A stretch of DNA of 64,000 nt from Octopus sinensis (Eukaryota): the NCBI RefSeq assembly GCF_006345805.1, contig NC_043020.1:4650001-4714000 (forward strand). The letters are read 5' to 3'. Of the stretch, positions 16,420-46,907 are shown piece by piece. Position 1 is the stretch's first letter. Each line of letters opens with the position of its first letter. A model generated the notes under the pieces. It was not told the origin of the DNA and made no database searches. It worked only from the letters and a program-made list of their open reading frames with translations. The translations under genes were made by a program, and so were the position numbers.

Positions 16420-16558
16420 GCGTGTCGGAAATTTACCCACGTGTGTTGTTATCTGTGATTAGACGTTGAAATTTTGTTGTGTAAAGTGATTAATATCGCG
16501 CAAGGCATTTGCCTCCACGTTTGGAAACCTTCTGAAGAGGTGAATTGACCCTCTAGTC

Positions 16559-17946
16559 ATGGCGACTTACGCGGGGGTCACGGAAAAATAATAATGATTC
16601 GGCAATAATCGTGAAGGATGTTTTCTTTGAGAAAAGTAAAATCAAAGAATATGAAAAGCTATTCAAAGGGAGGGTGATAGCGTGAAGCTAATCCCCCCCG
16701 CGAAAGCAAAGGAGGACAAGGAAAACAAAACTGTAACGTATAGAACCCAGGACAAAAGTACAAAGAAACTGGCAAGAGTGGAGATAGCAGAGATCGAAAA
16801 ATGTCTGGGAGACATAATGGATAAATCGACCTACGTGAGTAGAGGAAAAAATTTGGTACGGTGGAGGTGAGATGTGCAACGGAAGAAATTGCAGCCTCAC
16901 TGGCTACCACTGTTCTAAGAGCGGAAACATTTATAATGTGGCCCTCATACAAGGGAAGAAGAGGGGTCCGGGTTAAAATCCCGAATATACCCCCAGAAGT
17001 AAAAACAGAATGGCTGGCAACAGCTATTCTAGGAGCAGCAGAAGAGGAAGTGGAGGTGGAATCCTTTAAGGAGTCCAACGCAGTAAATTGGAGAGGATAT
17101 GGGGTAGAACTGTGTTTGATGGCACAAAAGAGGACATTGAAAGGTTCCCCTATAGAATAGAAATCGAAGACGAGAAAACCCTCAGTGTAATTGTAGAGGG
17201 AAGAAAGCCAAACTGCTACTTGTGCGGGACAAGGGGGCACATTAAAAAAGAGTGCCCGTTATATGAATTCATGGCGGAGTATGAGAAGGAAAATGAGAAA
17301 AGAAGAATACGGGAAATGAAAAAGAAAACATAGAAAAGGAGACAAACAACAAGAGAAAGGAAATAATAAGTCAACGAAGGAAAAAGAAATAAAAGAAAAG
17401 AAAGAAATAGAACCAAAACAGAGTCAGGAAAAGAAAAGAAAAAGAAACAAAACAGGAAAAAACAAGAGAGAGAACAGAACCAAACGAAAAGAAAAGACGG
17501 CACACAAAAAGAAAAAGAAAAGAACATAAACACGAGAGAAAGAGAGAACAGACAAAGAACCAAAAGACAAGAGAAGGAAGAAGAAAGAAAAGAAGGCAAA
17601 AAGAGAGAAGAGAGAAACAAAGAGAGGAGAACAAGGAAGAAATAAGCCCGAAAAGAAAACGAGAGAAAACGTAGGACGGAAACAAGATTACTACAAGTTA
17701 ATAACCTTCCATTTCAGCCCCGAAATGAAGGAATTGACATGTAGTATGGAGGGACATGTGTGGGTCAACAGGATGACTGATCAGTGGCAGGAGACTGCTC
17801 TGATCCCCGAAGAAAGAGTCGCTGAGTTCCTCAGAGCAGCTGGAGAGAGTGTAATTTTTTACACGGGTGTTCGAGTGAAAGAGCGGCTGCCTGAGGGCTC
17901 AGTGATTGACTTTAGAGACTTGAAAAGTATTATGGAATACGTGTGA
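16559..17946 (+). CDS. Type A ORF1, copy A1 (frameshifted as assembled)
   Basis: MATY start, CYLCGTRGHIKKEC knuckle, C-terminal ...DLKSIMEYV*. Confidence 0.7.
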
Positions 17947-18329
17947 GATTGTGAGAGGAGAGAGAAGAAAGAAGAGAAAAAGAAAAAAAAAAATGTGAAC
18001 TATAGGTGACGAAAATGTAACCTCTCGATTCCGGGGATCGAGTGGGCATTTGCATCTCATTGTAAATATTCTTTCATTTGTCATTTTTATTTTTATTTTT
18101 TCCCTTCTTGTCATTTCGCTTTCTTATTTTAAGTTCCCCGATTGTATTGTCCCCTCTATGTTCGCCCCTTGTGGGTAGTAATAAAATCAGCGTGTCGGAA
18201 ATTTACCCACGTGTGTTGTTATCTGTGATTAGACGTTGAAATTTTGTTGTGTAAAGTGATTAATATCGCGCAAGGCATTTGCCTCCACGTTTGGAAACCT
18301 TCTGAAGAAGGTGAATTGACCCTCTAGTC

Positions 18330-19720
18330 ATGGCGACTTACGGGGGTCACGGGAAAGAATAATAATGATTCGGCAATAATCGTGAAGGATGTTTTCTTTG
18401 AGAAAAGTAAAATCAAAGAATATGAAAAGCTATTCAAAAGGGAGGGTGATAGCGTGAAGCTAATCCCCCCCGCGAAAGCAAAGGAGGACAAGGAAAACAA
18501 AACTGTAACGTATAGAACCCAGGACAAAAGTACAAAGAAACTGGCAAGAGTGGAGATAGCAGAGATCGAAAAATGTCTGGGAGACATAATGGATAAATCG
18601 ACCTACGTGAGTAGAGGAAAAAATTTGGTACGGTGGAGGTGAGATGTGCAACGGAAGAAATTGCAGCCTCACTGGCTACCACTGTTCTAAGAGCGGAAAC
18701 ATTTATAATGTGGCCCTCATACAAGGGAAGAAGAGGGGTCCGGGTTAAAATCCCGAATATACCCCCAGAAGTAAAAACAGAATGGCTGGCAACAGCTATT
18801 CTAGAGCAGCAGAAGAGGAAGTGGAGGTGGAATCCTTTAAGGAGTCCAACGCAGTAAATTGGAGAGGATATGGGGTAGAACTGTGTTTGATGGCCACAAA
18901 AGAGACATTGAAAGGTTCCCCTATAGAATAGAAATCGAAGACGAGAAAACCCTCAGTGTAATTGTAGAGGGAAGAAAGCCAAACTGCTACTTGTGCGGGA
19001 CAAGGGGGCACATTAAAAAGAGTGCCCGTTATATGAATTCATGGCGGAGTATGAGAAGGAAAATGAAGAAAGAAGAATACGGGAAATGAAAAAGAAAACA
19101 TAGAAAAGGAGACAAAACAACAAGAGAAAGGAAATAATAAGTCAACGAAGGAAAAAGAAATAAAAGAAAAGAAAGAAATAGAACCAAACAGAGTCAGGAA
19201 AAGAAAAAGGAAAAGAAACAACAGGAAAAAAACAAGAGAGAGAACAGAACCAAACGAAAAGAAAAGACGGCACACAAAAAGAAAAAGAAAAGGAACATAA
19301 AACACGAGAGAAAGAGAGAACAGACAAAGAACCAAAAGACAAGAGAAGGAAGAAGAAAGAAAAGAAGGCAAAAAGAGAGAAAGAGAGAAACAAAGAGAGG
19401 AGAACAAGGAAGAAATAAGCCCGAAAAGAAAAACGAGAGAAAACGTAGGACGGAAACAAGATTACTACAAGTTAATAACCTTCCATTCCAGCCCCGAAAT
19501 GAAGGAATTGACATGTAGTATGGAGGGACATGTGTGGGTCAACAGGATGACTGATCAGTGGCAGGAGACTGCTCTGATCCCCGAAGAAAGAGTCGCTGAG
19601 TTCCTCAGAGCAGCTGGAGAGAGTGTAATTTTTTACACGGGTGTTCGAGTGAAAGAGCGGCTGCCTGAGGGCTCAGTGATTGACTTTAGAGACTTGAAAA
19701 GTATTATGGAATACGTGTGA
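18330..19720 (+). CDS. Type A ORF1, copy A2 (frameshifted as assembled)
   Basis: Same protein in pieces across frames. Confidence 0.7.
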
Positions 19721-20104
19721 GATTGTGAGAGGAGAGAGAAGAAAGAAGAGAAAAAAGAAAAAAAAAATTGTGAACTATAGGTGACGAAAATGTAACCTCT
19801 CGATTCCGGGGATCGAGTGGGCATTTGCATCTCATTGTAAATATTCTTTCATTTGTCATTTTTATTTTTATTTTTTCCCTTCTTGTCATTTCGCTTTCTT
19901 ATTTTAAGTTCCCCGATTGTATTGTCCCCTCTATGTTCGCCCCTTGTGGGTAGTAATAAAATCAGCGTGTCGGAAATTTACCCACGTGTGTTGTTATCTG
20001 TGATTAGACGTTGAAATTTTGTTGTGTAAAGTGATTAATATCGCGCAAGGCATTTGCCTCCACGTTTGGAAACCTTCTGAAGAAGGTGAATTGACCCTCT
20101 AGTC

Positions 20105-21489
20105 ATGGCGACTTACGCGGGGGTCACGGGAAAGAATAATAATGATTCGGCAATAATCGTGAAGGATGTTTTCTTTGAGAAAAGTAAAATCAAAGAATAT
20201 GAAAAGCTATTCAAAAGGGAGGGTGATAGCGTGAAGCTAATCCCCCCCGCGAAAGCAAAGGAGGACAAGGAAAACAAAACTGTAACGTATAGAACCCAGG
20301 ACAAAAGTACAAAGAAACTGGCAAGAGTGGAGATAGCAGAGATCGAAAAATGTCTGGGAGACATAATGGATAAATCGACCTACGTGAGTAGAGGAAAAAA
20401 TTTGGTACGGTGGAGGTGAGATGTGCAACGGAAGAAATTGCAGCCTCACTGGCTACCACTGTTCTAAGAGCGGAAACATTTATAATGTGGCCCTCATACA
20501 AGGGAAGAAGAGGGGTCCGGGTTAAAATCCCGAATATACCCCCAGAAGTAAAAACAGAATGGCTGGCAACAGCTATTCTAGGAGCAGCAGAAGAGGAAGT
20601 GGAGGTGGAATCCTTTAAGGAGTCCAACGCAGTAAATTGGAGAGGATATGGGGTAGAACTGTGTTTGATGGCCACAAAAGAGGACATTGAAAGGTTCCCC
20701 TATAGAATAGAAATCGAAGACGAGAAAACCCTCAGTGTAATTGTAGAGGGAAGAAAGCCAAACTGCTACTTGTGCGGGACAAGGGGGCACATTAAAAAGA
20801 GTGCCCGTTATATGAATTCATGGCGGAGTATGAGAAGGAAAATGAAGAAAAGAAGAATACGGAAATGAAAAAGAAAACATAGAAAAGGAGACAAAACAAC
20901 AAGAGAAGGAAAATAAGTCAACGAAGGAAAAAGAAATAAAAGAAAAGAAAGAATAGAACCAAAACAGAGTCAGGAAAAGAAAAAGGAAAAAGAAACAACA
21001 GGAAAAAAACAAGAGAGAAAGAACCAAACGAAAAGAAAAGACGGCACACAAAAAGAAAAAGAAAAGGAACATAAAACACGAGAGAAAGAGAGAACAGACA
21101 AAGAACCAAAAAGACAAGAGAAGGAAGAAGAAAGAAAAGAAGGCAAAAAGAGAGAAAGAGAGAAACAAAGAGAGAAACAAGGAAGAAATAAGCCCGAAAA
21201 GAAAACGAGAGAAAACGTAGGACGGAAACAAGATTACTACAAGTTAATAACCTTCCATTCCAGCCCCGAAATGAAGGAATTGACATGTAGTATGGAGGGA
21301 CATGTGTGGGTCAACAGGATGACTGATCAGTGGCAGGAGACTGCTCTGATCCCCGAAGAAGAGTCGCTGAGTTCCTCAGAGCAGCTGGAGAGAGTGTAAT
21401 TTTTTACACGGGTGTTCGAGTGAAAGAGCGGCTGCCTGAGGGCTCAGTGATTGACTTTAGAGACTTGAAAGTATTATGGAATACTGTGA
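20105..21489 (+). CDS. Type A ORF1, copy A3 (frameshifted as assembled)
   Basis: Same protein in pieces across frames. Confidence 0.7.
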
Positions 21490-21871
21490 GATTGTGAGAG
21501 GAGAGAGAAGAAAGAAGAGAAAAAAGAAAAAAAAATTGTGAACTATAGGTGACGAAAATGTAACCTCTCGATTCCGGGATCGAGTGGGCATTTGCATCTC
21601 ATTGTAAATATTCTTTCATTTGTCATTTTTATTTTTATTTTTTCCCTTCTTGTCATTTCGCTTTCTTATTTTAAGTTCCCCGATTGTATTGTCCCCTCTA
21701 TGTTCGCCCCTTGTGGGTAGTAATAAAATCAGCGTGTCGGAAATTTACCCACGTGTGTTGTTATCTGTGATTAGACGTTGAAATTTTGTTGTGTAAAGTG
21801 ATTAATATCGCGCAAGGCATTTGCCTCCACGTTTGGAAACCTTCTGAAGAAGGTGAATTGACCCTCTAGTC

Positions 21872-23262
21872 ATGGCGACTTACGCGGGGGTCACGGGAAA
21901 GAATAATAATGATTCGGCAATAATCGTGAAGGATGTTTTCTTTGAGAAAAGTAAAATCAAAGAATATGAAAAGCTATTCAAAAGGGAGGGTGATAGCGTG
22001 AAGCTAATCCCCCCCGCGAAAGCAAAGGAGGACAAGGAAAACAAAACTGTAACGTATAGAACCCAGGACAAAAGTACAAAGAAACTGGCAAGAGTGGAGA
22101 TAGCAGAGATCGAAAAATGTCTGGGAGACATAATGGATAAATCGACCTACGTGAGTAGAGGAAAAAAATTTGGTACGGTGGAGGTGAGATGTGCAACGGA
22201 AGAAATTGCAGCCTCACTGGCTACCACTGTTCTAAGAGCGGAAACATTTATAATGTGGCCCTCATACAAGGGAAGAAGAGGGGTCCGGGTTAAAATCCCG
22301 AATATACCCCCAGAAGTAAAAACAGAATGGCTGGCAACAGCTATTCTAGGAGCAGCAGAAGAGGAAGTGGAGGTGGAATCCTTTAAGGAGTCCAACGCAG
22401 TAAATTGGAGAGGATATGGGGTAGAACTGTGTTTGATGGCCACAAAAGAGGACATTGAAAGGTTCCCCTATAGAATAGAAATCGAAGACGAGAAAACCCT
22501 CAGTGTAATTGTAGAGGGAAGAAAGCCAAACTGCTACTTGTGCGGGACAAGGGGGCACATTAAAAAAGAGTGCCCGTTATATGAATTCATGGCGGAGTAT
22601 GAGAAGGAAATGAAGAAAAGAAGAATACGGGAAATGAAAAAGAAAACATAGAAAAGGAGACAAAACAACAAGAGAAAGGAAATAATAAGTCAACGAAGGA
22701 AAAAGAAATAAAAAAAGAAAGAAATAGAACCAAAACAGAGTCAGGAAAAGAAAAAGGAAAAAGAAACAACAGAAAAAAACAAGAGAGAGAACAGAACCAA
22801 ACGAAAAGAAAAGACGGGCACAAAAAGAAAAAGAAAAGGAACATAAAACACGAGAGAAAGAGAGAACAGACAAAGAACCAAAAAGACAAGAGAAGGAAGA
22901 AGAAAGAAAAGAAGGCAAAAAGAGAAAGAGAGAAACAAAGAGAGGAGAACAAGGAAGAAATAAGCCCGAAAAGAAAAACGAGAAACGTAGGACGGAAACA
23001 AGATTACTACAAGTTAATAACCTTCCATTCCAGCCCCGAAATGAAGGAATTGACATGTAGTATGGAGGGACATGTGTGGGTCAACAGGATGACTGATCAG
23101 TGGCAGGAGACTGCTCTGATCCCCGAAGAAAGAGTCGCTGAGTTCCTCAGAGCAGCTGGAGAGAGTGTAATTTTTTACACGGGTGTTCGAGTGAAAGAGC
23201 GGCTGCCTGAGGGCTCAGTGATTGACTTTAGAGACTTGAAAAGTATTATGGAATACGTGTGA
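21872..23262 (+). CDS. Type A ORF1, copy A4 (frameshifted as assembled)
   Basis: 259-aa N-terminal part intact through the CCHC knuckle. Confidence 0.7.
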
Positions 23263-23643
23263 GATTGTGAGAGAGAGAGAAGAAAGAAGAGAAAAAGAAA
23301 AAAAAATTGTGAACTATAGGTGACGAAAATGTAACCTCTCGATTCCGGGGATCGAGTGGGCATTTGCATCTCATTGTAAATATTCTTTCATTTGTCATTT
23401 TTATTTTTATTTTTTCCCTTCTTGTCATTTCGCTTTCTTATTTTAAGTTCCCCGATTGTATTGTCCCCTCTATGTTCGCCCCTTGTGGGTAGTAATAAAA
23501 TCAGCGTGTCGGAAATTTACCCACGTGTGTTGTTATCTGTGATTAGACGTTGAAATTTTGTTGTGTAAAGTGATTAATATCGCGCAAGGCATTTGCCTCC
23601 ACGTTTGGAAACCTTCTGAAGAAGGTGAATTGACCCTCTAGTC

Positions 23644-25041
23644 ATGGCGACTTACGCGGGGGTCACGGGAAAGAATAATAATGATTCGGCAATAATCGTG
23701 AAGGATGTTTTCTTTGAGAAAAGTAAATCAAAATATGAAAAGCTATTCAAAAGGGAGGGTGATAGCGTGAAGCTAATCCCCCCCGCGAAAGCAAAGGAGG
23801 ACAAGGAAAACAAAACTGTAACGTATAGAACCCAGGACAAAAGTACAAAGAAACTGGCAAGAGTGGAGATAGCAGAGATCGAAAAATGTCTGGGAGACAT
23901 AATGGATAAATCGACCTACGTGAGTAGAGGAAAAAAATTGGTACGGTGGAGGTGAGATGTGCAACGGAAGAAATTGCAGCCTCACTGGCTACCACTGTTC
24001 TAAGAGCGGAAACATTTATAATGTGGCCCTCATACAAGGGAAGAAGAGGGGTCCGGGTTAAAATCCCGAATATACCCCCAGAAGTAAAACAGAATGGCTG
24101 GCAACAGCTATTCTAGGAGCAGCAGAAGAGGAAGTGGAGGTGGAATCCTTTAAGGAGTCCAACGCAGTAAATTGGAGAGGATATGGGGTAGAACTGTGTT
24201 TGATGGCCACAAAAGAGGACATTGAAAGGTTCCCCTATAGAATAGAAATCGAAGACGAGAAAACCCTCAGTGTAATTGTAGAGGGAAGAAAGCCAAACTG
24301 CTACTTGTGCGGGACAAGGGGGCACATTAAAAAAAGTGCCCGTTATATGAATTCATGGCGGAGTATGAGAGGAAAATGAAGAAAAGAAGAATAGGGAATG
24401 AAAAAAAAAAAAAAGAAAACATAGAAAAGAGACAAAACAACAAGAGAAAGGAAATAATAAGTCAACGAAGGAAAAAGAAATAAAAGAAAAGAAAGAAATA
24501 GAACCAAAACAGAGTCAGGAAAAGAAAAAGGAAAAAGAAACAACAGGAAAAAAACAAGAGAGAGAACAGAACCAAACGAAAAGAAAAGACGGCACACAAA
24601 AAGAAAAAGAAAAGGAACATAAAACACGAGAGAAAGAGAGAACAGACAAAGAACCAAAAAGACAAGAGAAGGAAGAAGAAAGAAAAGAAGGCAAAAAGAG
24701 AGAAAGAGAGAAACAAAGAGAGGAGAACAAGGAAGAAATAAGCCCGAAAAGAAAAACGAGAGAAAACGTAGGACGGAAACAAGATTACTACAAGTTAATA
24801 ACCTTCCATTCCAGCCCCGAAATGAAGGAATTGACATGTAGTATGGAGGGACATGTGTGGGTCAACAGGATGACTGATCAGTGGCAGGAGACTGCTCTGA
24901 TCCCCGAAGAAAGAGTCGCTGAGTTCCTCAGAGCAGCTGGAGAGAGTAATTTTTTACACGGGTGTTCGAGTGAAAGAGCGGCTGCCTGAGGGCTCAGTGA
25001 TTGACTTTAGAGACTTGAAAAGTATTATGGAATACGTGTGA
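23644..25041 (+). CDS. Type A ORF1, copy A5 (frameshifted as assembled)
   Basis: Same protein in pieces across frames. Confidence 0.7.
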
Positions 25042-33905: not shown

Positions 33906-34128
33906 CGTGTCGGAAATCATTTTTTTTGCGTTATTAGTAAGTTGATATATTTTTGCTCTCGTACTGTTGTCTCTGTTATTATATACTGTTGGTCTACCTT
34001 TTGTCTATTGTTGTCTAACTGACGAAGTCAGCCTTCGCGCGAGGACTTCGCGTTGGTGTTCCCCCTCAGTGGGGGAAAACTAAAATTAATTTGGATTTAC
34101 CAAAGGCTTGTTAAGCCATTTGTTCAAG

Positions 34129-35519: not shown

Positions 35520-35527
35520 GGTAAGTA

Positions 35528-38500
35528 ATGGATTACATTTATGTTGGTTGTTTGAATGTGCGCGGCCTGGGAGCAGGCTGGAAGCAAGGTCGCTTCCTGC
35601 ATGATATCAGGTCGCGTAATTTAGATGTTATTGTTGCTACAGAAACCCGGTTAGAGGGGCCAAGAGGTCTACTCCCGCTGTTTGACGGCTACGAGAGTTT
35701 TTTCTCTCCTGGCAGTCCTACAGGCGGGGTGGGGTGTTGGTCCTATTAAAAAGAAACCGGGTTTCTGAGAAAAAGTTAATTTTTGCAGATCCAGAAGGTA
35801 GGCTGGTCGTTATGGATTTGACGTTCAGTAATGGTAAAGTTATCAGACTGGTTGCAATTTACGCACCCAACCATACAGGGCAAAGTGATTATTTTCGTGA
35901 ACTAGAAAACTTTCTTGGTACTTCGCATTCATTAGTGGTGCTAGGAGACTTTAACACAATTTGCAAAGCGGATGTAGATTGTGTTGGCTCGCGTCCAGAT
36001 AGAAAAGGCAACAGTGGCTTCATGGAACTGCTAAGCCGCTTTGAGCTAGCAGATCCTTATAGGCTGGAATTTCCGAACGCTCCATTGTGGACATGGTCAA
36101 ACAGCGACGGATCTTCCAGGTCATATTTAGATAGAATACTAATTAGAAAAGTAGACAGTAAAATAGCTAAGTGTCCACAGTTTTACCCGATCAGCTACAG
36201 TGATCATAAAATGGTCACTTGTAAGCTTGACATAGATAAGGTTAAAAATAGAGGATCCGGTTACTGGAAACTTAATACGTCCCTTTTGGCGATTAAGGAG
36301 TACAAAGACCGGATTAGGAATATAATTCAGAGGGCACTATCTGGTACCATCATTAATAACAAATGGTGGTACGCCCTCAAACGAGCCATCAAGTTTGAGT
36401 CTATTAGATATAACATAGGAGTAGTGGCTAGAGAGGCTAGAAGGGAAACTACTCTAGTTAAGGAATTAGAGGAAGCCATGAAAACTGGCTCTGCGGCTCA
36501 GGTGACGTCCAAGAGACTGGTGTTAAACCAGCACCTCGAGGCCAAACACATGGGCTGCATTGTCAGGGCTAGGATCCGCGCAATGGGTTGTGAAGGAATC
36601 AACGCCGTGAGATGGGCCCGAGTGGTGGAAGCTCGGCATGGTAACGATGCCACGATTCGATCTTTGACGAACCAACAAGGTGAGTTGATAAACGAACCCG
36701 AGGAGATGTGTGAGGCCTTTCAGGAGCACTTCGCTCAGCTTTTCGGTGAGTGCGGCGGACTGGATAGGAGGAGGGCCTTTACGGACCTACTCGACGGGCT
36801 GCCGCGCTTATCGGGGCGAGATGCGGAGGGCTGTGAAGGGCCAATCACGCCTGAGGAGGTGGTTGAGGCAATGGCGGACTGCGGCGCGGGCAAGGCGCCG
36901 GGTTTGGATGGTCTACCCTATGAGTTATATAAGAGTATGCCAGACTTGTTCGGGCACCTACTGGCGGAGGTCTATGCGAACTGGCAGCAGAACGGGCTTA
37001 TACCCAGATCTGTGCGCCGGGGAGTAGTGACTCGCGTCAGAAAGGACCCGAGCAAGGGGGAGTGCATTGATAATTTCAGGCCCATCACTCTGCTAAACAC
37101 AGAGTTGAAGATTTTGGCCAAAGTGTTATCGAAAAGATTGGCGCGTGTCGCGGATGGTCTGATCGGAGAGGCACAGACATGTGCCGTTCCGGGCAGATCC
37201 ATTCAGGATAATCTCCATCTAATGCGGTACACTATAGAGGGGTTTAATAGTGATTCTGGCAAGGGTGGGGCACTGGTCCATTTAGACCAATCTAAAGCTT
37301 TTGATAGGGTCGACCATCGTTACCTGGTATCTGCCCTGGCACGGTTCGGGCTGAGCCTTGGCTTCCTCAGGTGGATTATCCAAATTTATGATAACATCGA
37401 CTCGGTAGTTCGGGTGAACGGCTACTTGTCGAAGCCGTTCAAAATCAAACGCTCGGTTCGTCAAGGGTGTCCGCTCTCCCCGCTTTTGTACGTGATGGCT
37501 CTTGAGCCATTACTGCGAAAACCGAGCGGCATCCCGAGACAGCCAGGTAATGGAAAATCAGTGTCAGCGTACGCGGATGACATCACCATCATCGTAACCG
37601 AAATGGACCACCTATGTAAAGTAGGCAAGGCCATAGAGGTTTACGAGACGGTGACAGGAGCAAAAGTTAATCGCGAAAAGTCAGTCGGCTTGCAACTCGG
37701 CACCTGGAGAGGCAAGTCGATGCCTCCTGACAGCGTCGTGGGACGTTGGACGGAGGGTCCGATTAAACTGCTAGGGGTTTGGTTCGGTCCAGACTTCCAA
37801 ATAGAGAAGAATTTGGGCGAGGTATCGAGCAGGGTGGCTGCAGTAGCCAAGACCTGGTCTTGGCGGTGGCTATCCCTGAAAGGGAGGGCGGAGGTGGCGA
37901 ATGTGTTTATCGCATCGGTTATCACCTACCGCCTCTCCGTCGTTCCTTGCCCTGATTCGTGGTCGATCAAGTTGGAAAGACAGCTCTTCTACTTCTTGTG
38001 GAAGGGCGGGAAACCACTTGTGAAACGCTCTACTTGCTGTCAACAACCGTTAAAGGGTGGGCTAGGGATGCCTTGGCTGATGATGCGCAGACATGCGCTG
38101 AGGTTAAGACATCTGTGGCTCTACCTGGATGGTGAACGGGTGTGGTCTTCGCTAGCAAAACTGATGTTTCCCAAGTTCACTAATTTCGGTGGATGGGAAA
38201 CCTGGCTGAATCGTAGATCGAAACTTGGTACTTGGTACACGGAGTGTCGCAAGGCTCTCCTGCTATTCCGTCGCTCGGGCAACGCCTGCGGTGGGGGTTC
38301 CACCACATTCTTCTATAGAGGGTTGGTAGAGGCGGAATGTGAAGATACCTTGGGGGAAACCCTAGGTCTCTACGATAATCAGCTGGCCAGTCTGTTCCGA
38401 CGTACGTTCGAGCCGAGGACACTGGACAACTTCCAGAAGTCTCTGGCATGGCAATGCTACAGAGGAGCTCTACCTGTTCGGGATAAACTCGCAAGGCACG

Positions 38501-38920
38501 GTGGCCAAGACAGTCCGATATGTCCAAGATGCGGGCGGGATAGGGAAACCGTCCCGCACGCTATTGTTCATTGTCCGGACGTGTCTGAGGTGTGGGTTTA
38601 TGCCGAACACCTGTTGTCAGGTACACGAAGAGTACAGCTGTCGACTGAGTCGATTACAAAAATTGACCCACCGGATTTCCTCGTGAATGAAGGTAAGTTT
38701 CGTTTTCTCGTTGTAGTAGCAATTGCGAAAGAGGTGATATGGAAGACGAGAATGAAAGGTTTACAGTCAGGCAAGTTCATCTCCGGCTCTGGTTTGATGA
38801 ATATTTCATCTTTCACCTGAAAAGGAAGATAGGTTGGAGAGAATATGCCTGACTAGGAGAGTGTATGAAGAACGATGGAAGGATGTAGCACGAAAGTTGC
38901 GAGTGAAAGATACAACATAA
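35528..38920 (+). CDS. ORF2 of element C: APE endonuclease, reverse transcriptase, C-terminal CCHC
   Basis: CLNVRGL, GDFN, YLDRI, SDH; KAFDRVDH, RQGCPLSP, YADD; CPRC...HAIVHC; single-base shifts near 35730 and 38800. Confidence 0.9.
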
Positions 38921-39167
38921 ATGTAATACCAAGCGCAACCAAAAGTATCAGTGGGGAGGCGGGGCTCGTGGGGTCCGAGCTAAACCCGCACCCACTCCAC
39001 CCGTAATGTCTTCCGGTCTGTCCCATCATTCGATTTCTGTCCATTTATTGTAATTCATGAAAATTTTTAAATTCGATTTATTGTAAAAACCCATTCGTGT
39101 GTCTGACCCCATCATCAGATTGTATTGTCCCATCTTTGTTCGCCCCTTGTGGGTAATAATAAAACAA

Positions 39168-40950
39168 CGTGTCGGAAATCTACGTGTGTTGTTATCTGTG
39201 ACTAGACGGTGAAATTTTTTCTGTGTAAATTGATTTAATATCGCGCGAGGCGTTTGCCTCCACGTGTGGAAACCTTCCGAAGAAGGTGAATTGACCCTCT
39301 AGTCATGGCGACTTACGCGGGGGTCACCGGGAAAAATAATGATTCGTCGATAATCATAAAGGATGTTTTCTTTGAGAAGGATAAACTCAAAGAATATGAA
39401 AAGCTCTTCAAAAGGGAGGGTGATAGCGTGAAGCTAATCGCCCCCGCGAAAGCAAAAGAGGACAAAGAAAGCAAGACAGTGACATACAGAACCCAAGACA
39501 AAAATACAAAGAAACTGGCAAGAGTGGAGATAGTCGAAATTGAAAAATGTCTGGGAGACATAATGGGGAAAACAACCTACGTGAGTAGAGGCAAGAAATT
39601 TGGTACGGTGGAGGTGAGATGTGCAACGGAAGAAATTGCAGCCTCACTGGCTACCACTGTACTAAGAGCCGAAAAATTTACAATGTGGCCCTCATACAAG
39701 GGAAGAAGAGGGGTCCGGGTTAAAATCCCGAATATACCCCCAGAAGTGAAAACAGAATGGCTGGCAACAGCTATTCTAGGAGCAGCAGAAGAGGAAGTGG
39801 AGGTGGAATCCTTTAAGGAGTCCAACGCGGTAAACTGGAGAGGATATGGGGTAGAACTGTGTTTGATGGCCACAAAAGAGGACATTGAAAGGTTCCCCTA
39901 CAGAATTGAAATTGAAGATGAAAAAACCCTCAGTGTAATTGTAGAGGGAAGAAAACCAAACTGTTACTTGTGTGGGACAAGGGGGCACATTAAAAAAGAG
40001 TGCCCGTTATACGAATTCGTAGCGGAGTGCGAGCAGGAACTTGAAGAAAAGAAGAATACGGTAAATGAAAAAGAAAACATAGAAAAGGAAACAAAACAAC
40101 AAGAGAAAGGAAATAATAAGTCAATGAAGGAAAAAGAAATAAAAGAAAAGAAAGAAATAGAACCAAAACAGAGTCAGGAAAAAAAAAAGGAAAAAGAAAC
40201 AATAGGAAAAAAACAAGAGAGAGATCAGAATCAAACGAAAAGAAAAGACGGCACACAAAAGGAAAAAGAAAAGGAACATAAAACACGAGAGAAAGAGAGA
40301 ACAGAGAAACAACCAAAAAGACAAGAGAAGGAAGGAGAAAGAAAAGAAGGCAAAAAGAGAGAAAGAGAGAAACAAAGAGAGGAGAACAAGGAAGAAATAA
40401 GCCTGAAAAGAAAAATGAAGGAAAACGTAGGACGGAAACAAGATTACTACTACTACAAGTTAATAACCTTCCATTTCTGCCCTGAAATGAAAGACTTGAC
40501 ATGGAATACGGAGGGACATATATGGGTCGACAGGAATACCGATCAGTGGCAGGAGACTGCTCTAATCCCCGAAGAAAGAGTCGCTGAGTTCCTCAGAGCT
40601 GCCGGAGAGAGTGTAATATTTCACACGAAGGTTCGAGTGAGAGAGCGGCCGCCTGAGGGCTCAGTGATTGACTTTAGAGAATTGAAAGCTATTATGGAAT
40701 ATGTATAGAATTGTGAGAAGAAGGAGAAGAAAGAAGAGAAAAAAGAAAATTTTGTGAAATATATGTGACGAAAATGTAACCTCTTGATTCCGGGGATCGA
40801 GTGGACATTTACATCTCATTGTAAATATTCTTTCATATGTCATTTTTTTACTTTTATTTTTTCCTTTTCTTGTCATTCGCTTCCTTATTTTAAGTTCCCC
40901 GATTGTATTGTCCCATCTATGTTCGCCCCTTGTGGGTAGTAATAAAATCA
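39168..40950 (+). mobile_element. ORF1-only element A' (diverged type A)
   Basis: Same layout as the A units; shared 3' tail. Confidence 0.92.
39305..40708 (+). CDS. Intact 467-aa ORF1 (N-terminal domain, CCHC zinc knuckle, K/E/R-rich linker, C-terminal domain)
   Basis: Uninterrupted ORF; CX2CX4HX4C knuckle CYLCGTRGHIKKEC. Confidence 0.9.
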   Translation: MATYAGVTGKNNDSSIIIKDVFFEKDKLKEYEKLFKREGDSVKLIAPAKAKEDKESKTVTYRTQDKNTKKLARVEIVEIEKCLGDIMGKTTYVSRGKKFGTVEVRCATEEIAASLATTVLRAEKFTMWPSYKGRRGVRVKIPNIPPEVKTEWLATAILGAAEEEVEVESFKESNAVNWRGYGVELCLMATKEDIERFPYRIEIEDEKTLSVIVEGRKPNCYLCGTRGHIKKECPLYEFVAECEQELEEKKNTVNEKENIEKETKQQEKGNNKSMKEKEIKEKKEIEPKQSQEKKKEKETIGKKQERDQNQTKRKDGTQKEKEKEHKTREKERTEKQPKRQEKEGERKEGKKREREKQREENKEEISLKRKMKENVGRKQDYYYYKLITFHFCPEMKDLTWNTEGHIWVDRNTDQWQETALIPEERVAEFLRAAGESVIFHTKVRVRERPPEGSVIDFRELKAIMEYV

Positions 40951-41175
40951 CATGGCGGAAAGCAAATCGCGTGTGTAGTGAGTTATTATATTTTGCCGTC
41001 GTATATATTTTCTCCGTTATATTCTACTGTGTGTCTAACTGTCTTTGTTTATTGTTGTACAACTGTTGAAGTCAGCCTTCGTGCGAGGGATTCGTGTTGG
41101 TGTTCAGCCCTCCGTGGGGGAAAAACTATCATTATTGCGGCTTGTGCCAAGGGCTTGTTAAGCCAGTTGTCGGAG

Positions 41176-42466
41176 ATGGACTCCCCCATCTCATATCCAC
41201 CTGTGTCTAGTGATGCAGGATCACCGGCGGTGTCGCCAAAGAAAAAAGATATTCCAGCACCAGCGAAAAAATTTTCAGAAGTAGCTGGTAAGAAAATTAA
41301 AAAATTTAACGTTGAAGACCTAAAGAAATATGCGGACTGTGTGACAAAAAGGGCACGGAAGTAACAGTGGTTACAAACGCCCAAAAACAGGAAGAAATTG
41401 CAAAAAGAAGAATAATTTATAAGACCTTCAATATAACAAGCAAATCGATACAAAAAATAGAGGAAAAAAAATCGAAAATTGCTTAAAGCCGATAATGGAT
41501 AAGATCACATACATCAATAGAGGAAAGAAATACGGCACAGTGGAGGTGAGATTCACAACAGAGGAGGTAGCCAAAAAGCTATCTATGGAACCAATAAAAG
41601 TGGAGAATATTGTTCTCCTCCCCCTGTATAGAGGAAAAAGAACATCAAAGATCACTATGAATAATATTCCGCCAGAAGCGGATGCCGAATGTCTGGTGGC
41701 AGCAGTTATGGTACGCCTGGAGGAAAAAATAAACATCCTCCAGGCCACAGTAGAGGAGGAAGAATTCTGGAAGGGGCAGCGGATAATAATAGCCATCTAG
41801 GCAGAAATACAAACCCTGGAAGAAATTCCAGAGACTCTAAAAATAAGCGAAGAAGATAGAGTCACAGTCTTCGTAGAGGGCAGAAAGCCGAGGTGCTTCG
41901 GCTGCGGTAAGAAAGGGCATGTAAGGGCAGAATGCCAACCCAAACCGCAGGAAGCAGCTCAGCCAGGTGGAAAAGCAGAAGAGGTGTCACCAGAAGCAGC
42001 GCCGGGTGGCCCAGAAGGGACGGCTGAAGGTGTGGAGGTGACAGAGGCAGCAGAACCAGTGGCGGAGGAAAAAAGAGCGAGGAAACGAAAAATGAGGAGG
42101 GGTGGTCAAAAATCACTAAAAAAAAAAAGAAAAACTGAAACCACCCCTCCCAAAGTGAACCAAAAGAAGAAAAGAGAGTCGTTGAACTCATTTATGGCCG
42201 TTAAGGCCTCGAACAATAGACTCGGTAATGTGTTGGCAGCTATGGCCAAAGTGGAAAAAATAGGGAAAAAAAATGACTATATATTGTACAGAATAGGCCG
42301 GAAGGATTACGGACGGATAAAGTCCGAATTTTTTCATGACGTGATTCCTCTCAGAATGGATATAACATCTCCATATATATTCGAGGGCCTGCGTCAGACT
42401 CCCCCACGAGGCCCAGAAAAAGAGACAAACAAAGAAGAAAAAGAAAAAACCGAACCACTGATATAA
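41176..42466 (+). CDS. ORF1 of element D (disrupted as assembled)
   Basis: MDSPISY start, RGKKYGTVEVRF, CFGCGKKGHVRAEC, ends ...KTEPLI*. Confidence 0.75.
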
Positions 42467-42474
42467 GATAAGTA

Positions 42475-45400
42475 ATGGATTACATTTATGTTGGTTGTTT
42501 AAATGTGCGCGGCCTGGGAGCAGGCTGGAAGCAAGGTCGCTTCCTTAATGATATCAGGTCGCGTAATTTAGATGTTATTGTTGCTACAGAAACCCGGTTA
42601 GAGGGGCCAAGAGGTCTACTCCCGCTGTTTGACGGCTACGAGAGTTTTTTCTCTCCTGGCAGTCCTACAGGCGGGGGTGGGGTGTTGGTCCTATTAAAAA
42701 GAAACCGGGTTTCTGAGAAAAAGTTAATTTTTGCAGATCCAGAAGGTAGGCTGGTCGTCATGGATTTGACGTTCAGTAATGGTAAAGTTATCAGACTGGT
42801 TGCAATTTACGCACCCAACCATAAAGGGCAAAGTGATTATTTTCGAGAACTGGAAAACTTTCTTGGTACTTCGCATTCATTAGTTGTGCTAGGAGACTTT
42901 AACACAATTTGCAAAGCGGATGTAGATTGTGTTGGCTCGCGTCCAGATAGAAAAGGTAACAGTAGCTTCATGGAACTGCTAAGCCGCTTTGAGCTAGCAG
43001 ATCCTTATAGGTTGGAATTTCCGAACGCTCCATTGTGGACATGGTCAAACAGCGACGGATCTTCCAGGTCATATTTAGATAGGATACTAATTAGAAAAGT
43101 AGACAGAAAAATAGCTAAGTGTCCACAGTTTTACCTGGTCAGCTACAGTGATCATAAAATGGTCACCTGTAAGCTTGACATAGATAAGGTTAAAAATAGA
43201 GGATCCGGTTACTGGAAACTTAATACGTCCCTTTTGGCGATTAAGGAGTACAAAGACCGGATTAGGACTATAAGTCAGAGGGCACTATCTGGTACCATCA
43301 TCAATAACAAATGGTGGTACGCCCTCAAACGAGCCATCAAATTCGAGTCAATTAGATATAGCATAGGAGTTGTGGCTAGAGAGGCTAGGAGGGAATCTAC
43401 TCTAGTTAAGGAATTAGAGGAAGCCTTGAAAACTGGCTCTGCGGCTCAGGTGACGTCCAAGAGACTGGTGTTAAACCAGCACCTCGAGGCCAAACACATG
43501 GGCTGCATTGTCAGGGCTAGGATCCGCGCAATGGGTTGTGAAGGAATCAACGCCGTGAGATGGGCCCGAGTGGTGGAAGCACAGCATGGTAACGATGCCA
43601 CGATTCGATCTTTGACGAACCAACAAGGTGAGTTGATAAACGAGCCCGAGGAGATGTGTGAGGCCTTTCACGAGCACTTCGCTCAGCTTTTCGGTGAGTG
43701 CGGCGGACTGGATAGGAGGAGGGCCTTTACGGACCTCCTCGACGGGCTGCCGCGCTTATCGGGGCAAGATGCGGAGGACTGTGAAGGGCCAATCACGCCT
43801 GGGGAGGTGGTTGAGGCGATGGCGGACTGCGGCGCGGGCAAGGCGCCGGGTTTGGATGGTCTACCCTATGAGTTATATAAGAGTATGCCAGACTTGTTCG
43901 GGCACCTACTGGCGGAGGTCTATGCGAACTGGCAGCAGAACGGGCTCATACCCAGATCTGTGCGCCGGGGAGTAGTGACACTCGTCAGAAAGGACCCGAG
44001 CAAGGGGGAGTGCATTGATAATTTCAGGCCCATCACTCTGCTAAACACAGAATTGAAGATTTTGGCCAAAGTGTTATCGAAAAGATTGGCGCGTGTCGCG
44101 GATGGTCTGATCGGAGAGGCACAGACATGTGCCGTTCCTGGCAGAACCATTCAGCATAATCTCCATCTTATGCGGTACACTATAGAGGGGTTTAATAGCG
44201 ATTCTGGCAGGGGTGGGGCACTGGTCCATTTAGACCAATCTAAAGCATTCGATAGGGTCGACCATCGATACCTGGTATCTGCCCTGGCACAGTTCGGGCT
44301 GAGCCTTGGCTTCCTCAGGTGGATTATCCAAATTTATGACAACATCGACTCGGTAGTTCGGGTGAACGGCTTCTTATCGAAGCCGTTCAACATCAAGCGC
44401 TCGGTTCGTCAAGTGTGTCCGCTCTCCCCGCTTTTGTACGTGATGGCTCTTGAGCCATTACTGCGAAAACTGAGCGGCATCCCGAGACAGCCAGGTAGTG
44501 GAAAATCGGTGTCAGCGTACGCGGATGACATCACCATCATCGTAACCGAAATGGACCACCTACGTAAAGTAGGCAAGGCCATAGAGGTTTACGAGACGGT
44601 GACAGGAGCAAAAGTTAATCGCGAAAAGTCAGTCGGCTTGCAACTCGGCACCTGGAGAGGCAAGTCGATGCCTCCTGACAGCGTCGTGGGACGTTGGACG
44701 GAGGGTCCGATTAAGTTGCTAGGGGTTTGGTTCGGTCCAGACTCCAAATAGAGAAGAATTGGGGCGAGGTATCGAGCAGGGTGGCTGCAGTAACCAAGAC
44801 CTGGTCTTGGCGGTGGCTATCCTGAAAGGGAGGGCGGAGGTAGCCAATGTGTTTATCGCATCGGTTATCACCTACCGCCTTTCCGTCGTTCCTTGCCCTG
44901 ATTCGTGGTTGATCAAGTTGGAAAGACAGCGCTTCTACTTCTTGTGGAAGGGCGGGAAACCACTTGTGAAACGCTCTACTTGCTGTCAACAACCGTTAAA
45001 GGGTGGGCTAGGGATGCCTTGGCTGATGATGCGCAGACATGCGCTAAGGTTAAGACATCTGTGGCTCTACCTGGATGGTGAACGGGTGTGGTCCCCGCTA
45101 GCAAAACTGATGTTTCCCAAGTTCACTAGTTTCGGTGGATGGGAAACCTGGCTGAATCGTAGATCGAAACTAGGCACATGGTACACGGAGTGTCGCAAGG
45201 CTCTCCTGCTATTCCGTCGCTCGGGCAACGCCTGCGGTGGGGGTTCCACCACATTCTTCTATAGAGGGTTGGTAGAGGTGGAATGTGAAGATATCTTGGG
45301 GGAAGCCCTAGGTCTATACGATAATCAGCTGGCCAGTCTGTTCCGACGTACGTTTGAGCCGAAGACACTGGACAACTTCCAGAAGTCTCTGGCATGGCAA

Positions 45401-45868
45401 TGCTACAGAGGAGCTCTACCTGTTCGGGATAAACTCGCAAGGCACGGTGGCCAAGACAGTCCGATATGTCCAAGATGCGAGCGGGATAGGGAAACCGTCC
45501 CGCACGCTATTGTTCATTGTTCGGACGTGTCTGAGGTGTGGGTTTATGCCGAACAGCTGTTGTCAAGCACACGAAGAGTACAGCTGTCGACTGAGTCGAT
45601 TACAAAAATTGACCCACCGGATTTCCTCGCGAAAGAAGGTAAGTTTTGTTTTCTCGTTGTAGTAGCAATTGCGAAAGAGGTGATATGGAAGACGAGAATG
45701 AAAGGTTTACAGTCAGGCAAGTTCATCTCCGGCCCTGGTTTGATGAATTATTTCATCTTTCACCTGAAAAGGAAGATAGGGCTGGAGAGAATATGCCTGG
45801 CTAAGAGAGTGTATGAAGAACGATGGAAAGATGTAGCACGAAAGTTGCGAGTGAATGATACCACATAA
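42475..45868 (+). CDS. ORF2 of element D: APE endonuclease, RT, CCHC (frameshift near 44750)
   Basis: 758-aa and 369-aa ORFs; YADD; RQVCPLSP variant of the conserved QG motif. Confidence 0.88.
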
Positions 45869-46085
45869 ATGTAAAACTAAACGAAACTAAAAGTATCAGT
45901 GGGGAGGCGGGGCTCGTGGGGTCCGAGCTAAACCCGCTCCCACTCTATCCGTAATGTCTTCCGGTCTGTTCTCCATTCGATTTTTTCTATTTTGTAATTT
46001 TCTGTAAAACCCATTCGTGTATCTGACCCCACATCAGATTGTATTGTCCCATCTATGTTCGCCCCTTGTGGGTAATAATAAAACA

Positions 46086-46400
46086 ACATGGAGGAAAGCA
46101 CCTTCGAAAAGTGTCTTGTTGCGACTATGAAAGGTATCTAATCAGAGGCGGTAAATTCGCCACAATAGAAGCAAGGTTCGAGTCAACGGAGCGTGCAAGG
46201 GAGTACTCGACTCGAACTTGCAAAGTGGAAATATTTTATTTTTACCTTTATATCTGGGACGTAGGACGTCCCGGATAAAAATTTAAAATGCCCCCCCCGA
46301 AGTAGTGGTAGGCTGGATTGTAGCCACACTTCTATACAAGAGGGAGGACAAGTTACAATTGATCGAAATTGCAAGAGAGGGCTTACAATTCCAGTCTGTT
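46086..46400 (+). pseudogene. Right half of the interrupted Tx1-type ORF1 relic
   Basis: MEESTFEKCL / IRGGKFATIEARF / LPLYLGRRTSRIKI*NAPPEVVVGWIVATLL align with EIEKCL / RGKKFGTVEVRC / LPLYKGKRTSKISMNNIPPE. Confidence 0.75.

Positions 46401-46754: not shown

Positions 46755-46825
<71 letters not shown>

Positions 46826-46852: not shown

Positions 46853-46907
<55 letters not shown>

What the first reader, a model, noticed from the sequence alone, without database searches (positions are those of the whole stretch)
16420..46100. Every 3' end abuts the same target-like motif, which is regenerated at each element's 5' end
Seen: CGTGTCGGAAAT occurs 12 times (left flank plus 11 junctions: 16421, 18191, 19966, 21733, 23505, 25287, 27066, 28850, 30625, 32519, 33906, 39168), although the A, B and C 5' UTRs diverge soon after it. 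The last two junctions read CATGGCGGAAAGCA (40951) and CATGGAGGAAAGCA (46087). The consensus is CRTGKMGGAAAK. Inference: a sequence-specific endonuclease target is duplicated as a TSD or carried in the 5' end, so each insertion recreates a landing site. The 15-bp ACATGG(C/A)GGAAAGCA pair around D looks like the founding TSD.
Basis: partly seen in the sequence, partly recalled or inferred. Interest (0 to 1): 0.82.

Follow-up and report, generated by a model that had tools for sequence, protein, structure and literature searches.

The report
LINEs stacked at a self-renewing site
In an octopus genome, thirteen L1-like retrotransposons sit head to tail at one spot inside an older repeat, and each carries a copy of the 12-15-base target at its 5' end, so the landing site persists; this is a clear new example of a known habit of target-specific LINEs.

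Summary
CGTGTCGGAAAT occurs 12 times, exactly at the stated coordinates (0.01 expected by chance). The two CATGG[C/A]GGAAAGCA copies flank element D.

The window is octopus DNA. The array (16420-46086) holds 13 L1/Tx1-like non-LTR retrotransposons: two autonomous (C, D) and eleven ORF1-only (A1-A9, B1-B2).

The LINE copies differ by 0.5-2.5% between loci and the H arms by 3-11%, so the insertions were independent.

Close relatives use two other sites. There, uninterrupted paralogous copies show that the sandwiched motif is a true 15-16-bp target-site duplication. B and D-like elements carry a different 5' motif at the second site, so the motif comes from the target and is not intrinsic to the element.

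Age order and an inherited extra G suggest that stacks grow at the junction with the H left arm.

This is sequential insertion by a target-specific LINE. It matches the R1 arrays, the tandem SINEU-3 copies and the Tx1L/Tx1D composite. It is a new member of a known kind.

The parts
15727..16419 (+). Left arm of host repeat H, a Helitron-like element. It starts with TC after an A, ends ...GATTCGAACA, and contains a 148-bp tandem duplication at 15774-16066.
   Evidence: It is 84-96% identical to the sequence immediately left of the stacks in L001, L002, L004, L005, L007, L008 and L010. The terminus was read.
16420..30623 (+). A1-A8: eight ORF1-only elements of about 1.77 kb, head to tail. Starts are 16420, 18190, 19965, 21732, 23504, 25286, 27065 and 28849. 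Each begins G+CGTGTCGGAAAT and ends ...GTAGTAATAAAATCA.
   Evidence: Mutual substitution distance is 0-1.4%. The nearest relatives, L003 copies 1-4, are 0.6% away. All ORF1 frames are broken in this assembly.
30624..33904 (+). B1 (30624-32517) and B2 (32518-33904, with an internal deletion of about 500 bp). This is a second ORF1-only family with the same 5' motif and the tail ...AATAATAAAACAA.
   Evidence: The same family (88-91% identical) carries TTCCAGTCT instead at site 2 in L007 and L008.
33905..39167 (+). C: an autonomous element. ORF1 starts at 34129 and is fragmented. ORF2 (APE+RT+CCHC) runs from 35528 to about 38920 with frameshifts. The 5' end is G+CGTGTCGGAAAT.
   Evidence: ORFs. 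(human L1 ORF2p, E 1.4e-60, covering APE and RT). (1.0% from the L002 and L010 copies over the last 2.5 kb).
39168..40950 (+). A9: an older A copy with an intact 467-aa ORF1 (39305-40708) holding one CCHC knuckle. The 5' end is CGTGTCGGAAAT without the extra G.
   Evidence: 85-94% identity to the closest predicted octopus proteins; 7.5% from A1-A8.
40951..46086 (+). D: an autonomous element next to the host right arm. ORF1 starts at 41176. ORF2 is 42475-44751 plus 44759-45868. The 5' end is CATGGCGGAAAGCA.
   Evidence: 3.6-4.3% from all other sampled copies.
16421..16432 (+). Leftmost copy of the sandwiched motif (CGTGTCGGAAAT), directly after the host left arm plus G. Identical copies start at 18191, 19966, 21733, 23505, 25287, 27066, 28850, 30625, 32519, 33906 and 39168.
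40951..40964 (+). Left copy of the founding duplication (CATGGCGGAAAGCA) at the 5' end of D.
46087..46100 (+). Host (right) copy of the site-1 target, CATGGAGGAAAGCA. It is the first bases of the H right arm.
   Evidence: It is identical in L002, L003, L005 and L010 directly after the last element.
46087..46557 (+). Right arm of host repeat H. It ends with the hairpin GACCCGGCAACGACGGGTC (46528-46546), then TTTAATGCTAG, followed by T(AT)n.
46389..46403 (+). Unoccupied site 2 (GGGCTTACAA|TTCCAGTCTGTTATA) inside the H right arm. The sequence occurs once in the window.
   Evidence: It is occupied by stacks of B and D-like elements in L007 and L008, each element preceded by a copy of this motif.
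46037..46086 (+). An example of the about 50-nt 3' tail (GATTGTATTGTCCCATCTATGTTCGCCCCTTGTGGGTAATAATAAAACAA) shared by A, B, C and D. Families F and G and a partner SINE carry variants of it.

Best explanation
The array is a stack made by repeated target-primed reverse transcription at one site.

The elements. A lineage of L1/Tx1-like, APE-type non-LTR retrotransposons is site-specific. It comprises autonomous C and D and ORF1-only passengers A and B, which share the about 50-nt 3' tail. The target is one position (site 1, ...GATTTGAACA|CATGGAGGAAAGCA...) inside an older about 1.2-kb Helitron-like repeat, H.

The proposed cycle (inferred).
- The bottom strand is nicked at or just 5' of AACA. 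These bases are identical to the last bases of the element RNA (...AAAACAA or ...AAATCA) and can pair with it to prime cDNA synthesis.
- The top strand is cut 11-16 nt downstream.
- The intervening host bases therefore end up on both sides of the new element as a TSD.
- The left TSD copy stays joined to the H left arm, so left arm plus motif, the landing site, is rebuilt.
- The next element enters there and pushes earlier ones to the right. On that reading the order of arrival in the window was D, A9, C, B, then A.

Why variants travel. Transcripts seem to start at or before the left TSD copy, so the motif also travels in the RNA. It can then help the 5' end join by homology. This would explain why motif variants are sometimes copied from the neighbour and sometimes shared with relatives at other loci.

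A1-A8. These eight near-identical copies are either a rapid burst of insertions or, more likely for some of them, unequal-crossover copies of one insertion.

Shown versus inferred. Shown: site specificity, the TSD nature of the motif at sites with empty paralogues, independence of the insertions, and the target-derived nature of the motif. Inferred: nick positions, the role of the APE domain and the left arm, the direction of growth, and transcription of the motif.
For: Identity of the elements.
- ORF2 matches human L1 ORF2p at E 1.4e-60 over endonuclease and RT.
- Homologues carry RVT_1, Exo_endo_phos and zf-RVT.
- ORF1 hits are octopus proteins.

Same site at independent loci.
- The left and right arms of H flank stacks in the window, L002, L005 and L010. 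One arm is visible in L001, L003 and L004.
- Flanks beyond H are unrelated between loci.

Insertions are independent and younger than the host.
- C-type copies differ by 0.5-2.5% over their last 2.5 kb.
- The H left arm differs by 3.4-8.3%, and right arm positions 1-300 by 5-10.7%, for the same loci.
- A copies in one array belong to different subfamilies whose nearest relatives sit at other loci, for example L001_3 and L004_1 at 0.17%.

The motif is a true TSD.
- Site 2 is unoccupied in the window and in L002, L003, L005 and L010, where TTCCAGTCTGTTATA occurs once. In L007 and L008 a 9-16-nt copy of it precedes every element.
- The SINE-head site shows the same pattern.
- A fourth motif, TCATCGATACTC, is sandwiched in L009.

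The motif is target-derived.
- B and D-like elements have different first 9-20 nt at site 1 and site 2.

Growth at the left.
- The nearest inter-locus distance of A copies rises from left to right within arrays (permutation p 0.02, or 0.09 after collapsing possible duplicates).
- In the window the order is D 3.6%, A9 3.25%, C 1.0%, A1-8 0.6%.
- An extra G first seen left of C is present at every junction further left, including the left-arm junction. It is absent at C|A9, A9|D and D|host.

Precedent.
- Tandem SINEU-3 copies sandwich a 16-bp TSD in a mariner element, and Tx1 inserts into Tx1D (PMC4494074).
- The R1 array has a 33-nt rDNA TSD, explained by the double-insertion model (PMC5932611).
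Against: - No unoccupied copy of site 1 was available, so the exact length of the site-1 TSD and the nick position are inferred by analogy.
- The motif copies are not faithful. Up to 4 of 12 positions and small indels differ between neighbours.
- The same non-host variants recur at different loci (CGTGTCGGAAAT in the window, L001 and L004_1; CATGTCTGAAAT in L004 and L005). A pure fill-in TSD does not predict this.
- Element F in L005 sits at the left-arm junction with no motif and one host base missing.
- The age gradient is statistically modest, and L001_8 is an exception.
- Sites 1 and 2 share only AACA(A) upstream, yet are used by ORF2s that are about 96% identical. A purely protein-encoded specificity is therefore not demonstrated.
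- Sampling covers 10 loci reached through annotated ORF1 proteins. It is not a genome-wide census.
Confidence: 0.8

Rival explanations
1. The motif is simply the intrinsic 5' terminus of these elements. The array arose from one or a few insertions followed by unequal crossing-over or tandem duplication, and there is no site specificity.
For: A1-A8 are 0-1.4% apart with identical junctions. An A/B chimera in L005 and the internally deleted B2 show that recombination and deletion occur inside arrays. The GGAAAT part of the motif plus the following bases is family-specific.
Against: Six heterologous junctions in the window (host|A1, A8|B1, B2|C, C|A9, A9|D, D|host) cannot come from unequal exchange between like units. 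The same host position is occupied at six other loci with different array compositions. The same families carry a different 5' terminus at site 2. Each of the 7 A copies in L003 has a different junction variant.
Confidence: 0.05
2. A single LINE insertion into H happened once. The composite of H plus its array was then spread by transposition of the Helitron-like host or by segmental duplication, so the repeated 'same site' is inherited and not re-targeted.
For: Every sampled stack lies in H with an autonomous element next to the right arm. L007 and L008 share the same H deletion variant and a similar B plus D-like content.
Against: C copies are 0.5-2.5% apart, while the H arms at the same loci are 3-11% apart. 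The 5' halves of the base elements differ by up to 20-30% between loci, and the window has D where the others have C. A subfamilies are shared across loci in different orders. Other families show the same sandwich at unrelated targets.
Confidence: 0.05
3. Each stack was made in one event. Either the reverse transcriptase jumped from the 5' end of one RNA to the 3' tail of another (end-to-end template jumping), or a read-through multi-element transcript was copied, giving precise tail-to-head concatemers.
For: The junctions are precise tail-to-head joins with occasional extra bases. The RT must recognise the shared 3' tail. Template jumping is documented for the R2 RT (cited in PMC4494074).
Against: Elements within a stack differ greatly in apparent age (0.2% to over 3%) and show a left-right gradient. 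Neighbour pairs are not co-inherited between loci: L001_8 and L002_1 are 0.68% apart, but their adjacent C elements differ by 13% in the 5' 1.6 kb. Jumping does not explain a host-derived motif at each junction.
Confidence: 0.05
4. This is a telomere-like array built by repeated healing of a chromosome end, as with HeT-A, TART and TAHRE in Drosophila. The mix of Gag-only and autonomous elements in one orientation fits that picture.
For: The elements are head to tail in a single orientation, and ORF1-only and ORF1+ORF2 elements are mixed.
Against: The array is internal, with 16 kb and 18 kb of other sequence on either side and both halves of one host repeat as its flanks. The 5' ends are complete and not eroded. 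A target duplication sits at every junction.
Confidence: 0.01

Closest known systems
Tx1L inserted in Tx1D in Xenopus laevis, and the Tx1 clade of target-specific APE-type LINEs (Keno, Kibi, Koshi and others; PMC4494074, PMC4640811)
   Same: An L1-like ORF2 (APE + RT + C-terminal CCHC) and an ORF1 with a CCHC knuckle. Insertion is at one defined position inside another transposable element, giving composite elements. L1-Tx1 families are annotated as recently active in O. vulgaris (PMC13282606).
   Different: The host here is a Helitron-like repeat (and, for relatives, a SINE head), not a piggyBac-type element or an snRNA gene. Stacks reach 13 elements from several families. Placement of this RT inside the Tx1 clade was not tested by phylogeny.
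Tandem SINEU-3 insertions sandwiching a 16-bp TSD in Mariner-N4_AMi in crocodilians (Kojima 2015, PMC4494074)
   Same: Retroposons with target preference land twice at the same site of a DNA transposon, with one TSD copy between the tandem copies. This is interpreted there as sequential insertion.
   Different: Those are SINE dimers with an unidentified LINE partner. Here, autonomous LINEs, ORF1-only elements and SINEs all take part, and the stacks are much longer.
R1 tandem array of Drosophila melanogaster and the double-insertion model (Roiha 1981, as cited in McGurk and Barbash 2018, PMC5932611)
   Same: A site-specific APE-type LINE with tandem elements separated by an identical duplication of the target (33 nt of rDNA). 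A dimer forms by double insertion and is then amplified by unequal exchange, which is the likely history of A1-A8.
   Different: R1 belongs to a different clade and targets 28S rDNA. The R1 array is one family moved out of its normal context. Here, several families stack in situ at many copies of the target.
HeT-A, TART and TAHRE telomeric arrays of Drosophila, and HAL1 (half-L1) elements of mammals
   Same: ORF1(Gag)-only elements coexist with, and presumably depend on, autonomous relatives. The arrays are head to tail in one orientation.
   Different: The array is not at a chromosome end, insertion is site-specific with a TSD, and there is no poly(A) tail. HAL1 copies are dispersed, not stacked.

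Membership tests
APE-type non-LTR retrotransposon of the L1/Tx1 group | ORF2 with an N-terminal apurinic-like endonuclease followed by a reverse transcriptase | tested here: met
   Human L1 ORF2p at E 1.4e-60 aligns query residues 16-799 to residues 89-892, covering EN and RT. L1 EN-only chains also hit. Homologues carry PF03372 plus PF00078.
APE-type non-LTR retrotransposon of the L1/Tx1 group | A C-terminal Cys-His motif (CX2CX8HX4C, zf-RVT) after the RT | tested here: met
   CPRCGRDRETVPHAIVHC is present in the C and D ORF2 translations. PF13966 is present in homologues.
APE-type non-LTR retrotransposon of the L1/Tx1 group | ORF1 with CCHC zinc knuckle(s) | tested here: met
   CYLCGTRGHIKKEC in A9 and CFGCGKKGHVRAEC in C and D. 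Relatives show weak or faint PF00098 hits. PDB CCHC hits are only E 0.04.
APE-type non-LTR retrotransposon of the L1/Tx1 group | RT phylogeny places the element inside the Tx1 clade rather than L1 proper or another clade | not tested
   No reference set of LINE RTs was available. Only L1 and R2 structures could be compared.
Target-site-specific LINE | Independent copies occupy the same nucleotide position of a repeated target | tested here: met
   Seven site-1 loci and two site-2 loci share identical host junctions and have unrelated outer flanks. The insertions are younger than the host copies.
Target-site-specific LINE | The element-encoded endonuclease cleaves that sequence specifically | not testable with these tools
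   Only a correlation is available. Site-2 elements share 14 diagnostic nucleotide differences (about 10 amino-acid changes) in the APE domain, but they form a single lineage.
Tandem formed by sequential (double) insertion with a sandwiched TSD | One copy of the target duplication lies between consecutive elements, and the same sequence occurs once in unoccupied targets | tested here: met
   Met for site 2 and for the SINE-head site. For site 1 no unoccupied copy was found, so it is inferred there.
Tandem formed by sequential (double) insertion with a sandwiched TSD | Elements in a tandem are separate insertion events, differing in family, age or junction | tested here: met
   There are four families in the window stack. 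A subfamilies within arrays have their nearest relatives at other loci. L003 has a different junction variant per copy. A1-A8 remain unresolved.
Helitron (host repeat H) | A 5' TC and a 3' CTRR terminus, a hairpin 10-12 nt before the 3' end, and insertion between A and T without a TSD | tested here: met
   The termini are ...A|TCTTTATA... and ...GACCCGGCAACGACGGGTC TTTAATGCTAG|T..., with 11 nt between the hairpin and the end. The same ends are seen in the window, L001, L002, L003 and L004. This rests on sequence inspection only, and no autonomous Rep/Hel partner was sought.
Drosophila-type telomeric retrotransposon array | Located at a chromosome end, attached by the 3' end, with eroded 5' ends and no target duplication | tested here: not met
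   The array is internal, lies between the two halves of one repeat, has full 5' ends, and has a TSD at each junction.

The most novel reading that the evidence does not exclude
Target choice may be programmed largely by the copy of the target that the element carries in its own RNA, and not by the endonuclease. That copy would be the transcribed left TSD at the 5' end and/or read-through into the right TSD at the 3' end. Wherever an element lands, its progeny would then inherit a preference for homologous sites. This would explain three things. ORF2s about 96% identical serve two unrelated sites that share only AACA(A). Several relatives each have a different repeated target. Non-host motif variants recur between loci.
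Probability: 0.12. Interest if true: 0.85.

Novelty: new member of a known kind. Interest (0 to 1): 0.5.

Why it matters
- It adds a cephalopod example of TE-in-TE homing by an L1/Tx1-like LINE. It is unusually clean, with at least three, probably four, different repeated targets used by close relatives in one genome.
- It shows how a TSD can keep a landing site alive, so that one site accumulates a dozen elements. That is a direct route from a dispersed LINE to a satellite-like array.
- It supplies natural material for asking what sets LINE target specificity. Two endonuclease variants about 10 residues apart use two sites, which is of practical interest for RNA-templated site-specific insertion.
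- It shows that ORF1-only elements follow an autonomous element into the same site.
- For octopus genomics, these loci will be mis-annotated as tandem repeats or as multi-copy hypothetical genes. The A ORF1 is currently annotated as uncharacterized protein-coding genes.

Tried and rejected
- Rfam (gathering thresholds) and ARAGORN on the whole window found no RNA gene that could be the target, and no ribozyme at the 5' ends.
- I searched all 64 kb plus ten fetched loci for an unoccupied site 1 in H, using both strict and sensitive BLAST with a synthetic left-arm plus right-arm query. None was found. The only hits were low-complexity noise, H fragments, and an inverted 125-bp piece of the H 3' end in L004.
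- The ORF2 protein search gave no close octopus gene models. The best hit was 57% identical, so it yielded no extra loci and no clade names.
- The PDB search with ORF1 gave only marginal CCHC hits.
- I tested whether the endonuclease domain separates by insertion site. Diagnostic differences exist, but the two site-2 elements form one lineage, so the test is inconclusive.
- I considered an HDV-like ribozyme or a structured 5' end as the reason for motif conservation. I rejected this because the motif is the most variable part of the 5' end, shows no covariation, and is replaced entirely at other sites.
- I considered co-mobilised A-C dimer transcripts. I rejected this because neighbouring pairs are not co-inherited between loci.
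- Literature searches found no prior description of these octopus stacks.


Full report
**Observation**

The 12-mer CGTGTCGGAAAT occurs 12 times on the + strand, at exactly the coordinates given. Shuffles give 0.01 expected. The degenerate consensus adds 40951 and 46087.

Reading the junctions shows the same layout each time. Each motif copy follows a conserved 3' tail...GATTGTATTGTCCC.TCTATGT.CGCCCCTTGTGGGTA[AG]TAATAAAA(TCA|CAA). Each is followed, after 12-14 nt, by a family-specific 5' UTR.

The region 16420-46086 holds 13 head-to-tail elements:
- A1-A8, about 1.77 kb each
- B1 and B2
- C, 5.26 kb
- A9
- D, 5.14 kb

**What the elements are**

C and D encode ORF1 plus an ORF2. The ORF2 matches human LINE-1 ORF2p at E 1.4e-60 across the endonuclease and reverse transcriptase. 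It ends in a CX2CX8HX4C motif. Database homologues carry RVT_1, Exo_endo_phos and zf-RVT.

A and B encode only an ORF1 with one CCHC knuckle. This ORF1 is intact in A9 at 467 aa. Its best matches are predicted octopus proteins at 85-94% identity, so the window is octopus DNA.

All families share the 3' tail. That is the usual sign that passengers borrow the RT of the autonomous partner. L1-Tx1 families are listed as recently active in O. vulgaris (PMC13282606). I did not test Tx1-clade membership by phylogeny.

**The flanks are a repeat**

I fetched genomic loci around the homologous ORF1 genes of O. vulgaris. They show that the sequence left of the array (window 15727-16419) and the sequence right of it (46087-46557) recur together around similar stacks:
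- L002, L005 and L010 show both arms.
- L001 and L004 show the left arm.
- L003 shows the right arm.

Similarity ends at the outer borders of these arms.

The about 1.2-kb unit, H, starts with TC after an A. It ends with a hairpin, 11 nt, and CTAG followed by T, and it lies in (TA)n. It therefore looks like a non-autonomous Helitron.

In every case the host reads ...GATTTGAACA, then the stack, then CATGGAGGAAAGCACCTTCG.... The right-hand motif copy at 46087 is host sequence.

**Independent insertions, not a travelling composite**

Between loci, the last 2.5 kb of the C-type elements differ by 0.5-2.5%. The H left arm differs by 3.4-8.3%, and right-arm positions 1-300 differ by 5-10.7%.

The array contents differ between loci, and the window has D at the base where the others have C. 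A copies within one array belong to different subfamilies whose closest relatives sit at other loci. Examples are L001_3 and L004_1 at 0.17%, and window A1-8 and L003_1 at 0.6%.

The same host position has therefore been hit many times.

**The motif is target-derived and is a real TSD**

L007 and L008 carry stacks of B and D-like elements at a second H position...CTAACAA|TTCCAGTCTGTTATA. Each element there begins with 9-16 nt of that sequence and not with the CGTG/CATGG motif.

The same position is unoccupied in the window (46389-46403, a single copy) and in four other H copies. This gives paralogous empty sites and shows a 15-nt duplication.

In L006, relatives F' and G sit in the head of a about 215-bp SINE at ...GGCAG|AAACGTTAGCACGCCG, with that 12-16-mer before each element. 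Intact SINE copies hold it once.

L009 shows a fourth sandwiched motif, TCATCGATACTC.

**Direction of growth and fidelity**

Within arrays, the nearest inter-locus distance of A copies increases from left to right. The permutation p is 0.02, or 0.09 after collapsing possible local duplicates.

In the window the order is D 3.6%, A9 3.25%, C 1.0% and A1-8 0.6%.

An extra G that first appears left of C is present at all junctions further left, including the host left-arm junction (GAACAG|CGTG). It is absent from the three junctions to the right.

Both observations fit entry at the junction between the left arm and the motif, with each new duplication copied from the previous leftmost one. I rate this direction as likely, not proven.

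The copies are not faithful. Neighbours can differ at up to 4 of 12 positions. Non-host variants recur at different loci. L004_1 carries the variant of its close relative L001_3 and not that of its neighbour. By contrast, window A1-8 carry the local variant and not that of their relatives in L003.

The simplest reading is that the left duplication is transcribed. It then travels with the RNA, and the 5' junction is resolved by homology between the cDNA and the target.

**What remains inferred**

- No empty site 1 was found.
- The only sequence shared by sites 1 and 2 is AACA(A) just upstream of the motif. This equals the last bases of the element RNA and fits primer-template pairing.
- ORF2 is about 96-97% identical between site-1 and site-2 elements. 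There are 14 diagnostic nucleotide differences in the APE domain, but the site-2 elements form one lineage. Whether the endonuclease, the left arm or the RNA-borne target copy sets the specificity is therefore open.
- A1-A8 are 0-1.4% apart with identical junctions. They may be a burst of insertions or unequal-crossover copies. Recombination inside arrays does occur, as the A/B chimera in L005 and the deleted B2 show.

**Comparison with known systems**

- The Tx1 clade is known for target specificity, and Tx1 inserts into the transposon Tx1D (PMC4494074, PMC4640811).
- Tandem SINEU-3 copies sandwiching a 16-bp TSD in a mariner element were interpreted as sequential insertion.
- The R1 tandem array, with its 33-nt rDNA duplication, is the classic double-insertion case later expanded by unequal exchange (PMC5932611).

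The octopus stacks work in the same way. They differ in their targets (a Helitron-like repeat and a SINE head), in their depth (up to 13 elements from four families), and in the constant position of an autonomous element at the base.

I found no prior description of them.

**Verdict**

This is a new member of a known kind and is of moderate interest.

Noticed in passing
window D 40951-46086; L002, L003, L005, L007, L008, L010 (right ends visible); L001, L004 (rightmost visible element): In all 7 stacks whose right end is visible, and in 2 more partly visible ones, the element touching the host right arm is an autonomous ORF1+ORF2 element. All ORF1-only elements lie to its left, although they outnumber autonomous ones about 4:1. 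No stack starts with a passenger.
   Followed up: partly
window 15727-16419 and 46087-46557: Host repeat H has Helitron hallmarks: 5' TC after an A, a hairpin GACCCG/CGGGTC 11 nt before a 3' CTAG, a following T, and a location in (TA)n. It also has an internal 148-bp tandem duplication at 15774-16066. An H variant in L007 and L008 lacks about 305 bp, and its two borders coincide with insertion sites 1 and 2.
   Followed up: partly
window 8744-8940 (-); L002 473-904 (-); L009 28254-28871 (-); L010 5463-5743: A about 215-bp SINE (head GGCGGCGAGCTGGCAGAAACGTTAGCACGCC, tail GCCCCTTGTGGGCAGTAAAGAAATAT) shares the LINE 3' tail. It is dispersed but often tandem. The upstream copy ends exactly at ...AG|AAACGTTAGC of the next, which is the same site used by LINE relatives in L006.
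   Followed up: partly
window C 33905-39167 and D 40951-46086, compared with L001-L010: ORF2 and the 3' UTR are 94-99.5% identical among all H-site autonomous elements. The 5' UTR plus ORF1 of the same elements differ by up to 20-39%. This suggests repeated exchange of the 5' module.
   Followed up: partly
window 16420-30623: A1-A8 differ by almost no substitutions, yet each has a different set of frameshifts. The longest sense ORFs are 126-318 aa, against 467 aa in A9. Many of the differences noticed when reading the copies lie in A-rich homopolymer runs, so this looks like indel noise of a long-read assembly and not decay.
   Followed up: no
L005 8594-10269: A further ORF1-only family, F, sits at the left-arm junction with no motif copy and one host base missing (GATTGAAC|GGGTGTG). 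It is an imprecise 5' junction that removes the landing site, and it is the leftmost element of that stack.
   Followed up: no
L005 12046-13682; window 32518-33904: There is a chimeric element (A for the first about 137 nt, then B from position about 412) and an internally deleted B2. These are evidence of recombination and deletion inside stacks.
   Followed up: no
L009 1-9345 and 30612-39929: One stack, with the motif TCATCGATACTC, lies between two large haemocyanin genes of O. vulgaris.
   Followed up: no
window 1-15700 and 46600-64000: The flanks are rich in tri- and tetranucleotide microsatellites ((TAA)n, (ATAC)n, (GAA)n, (AC)n). No further copies of the LINE tail occur outside the array.
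   Followed up: no
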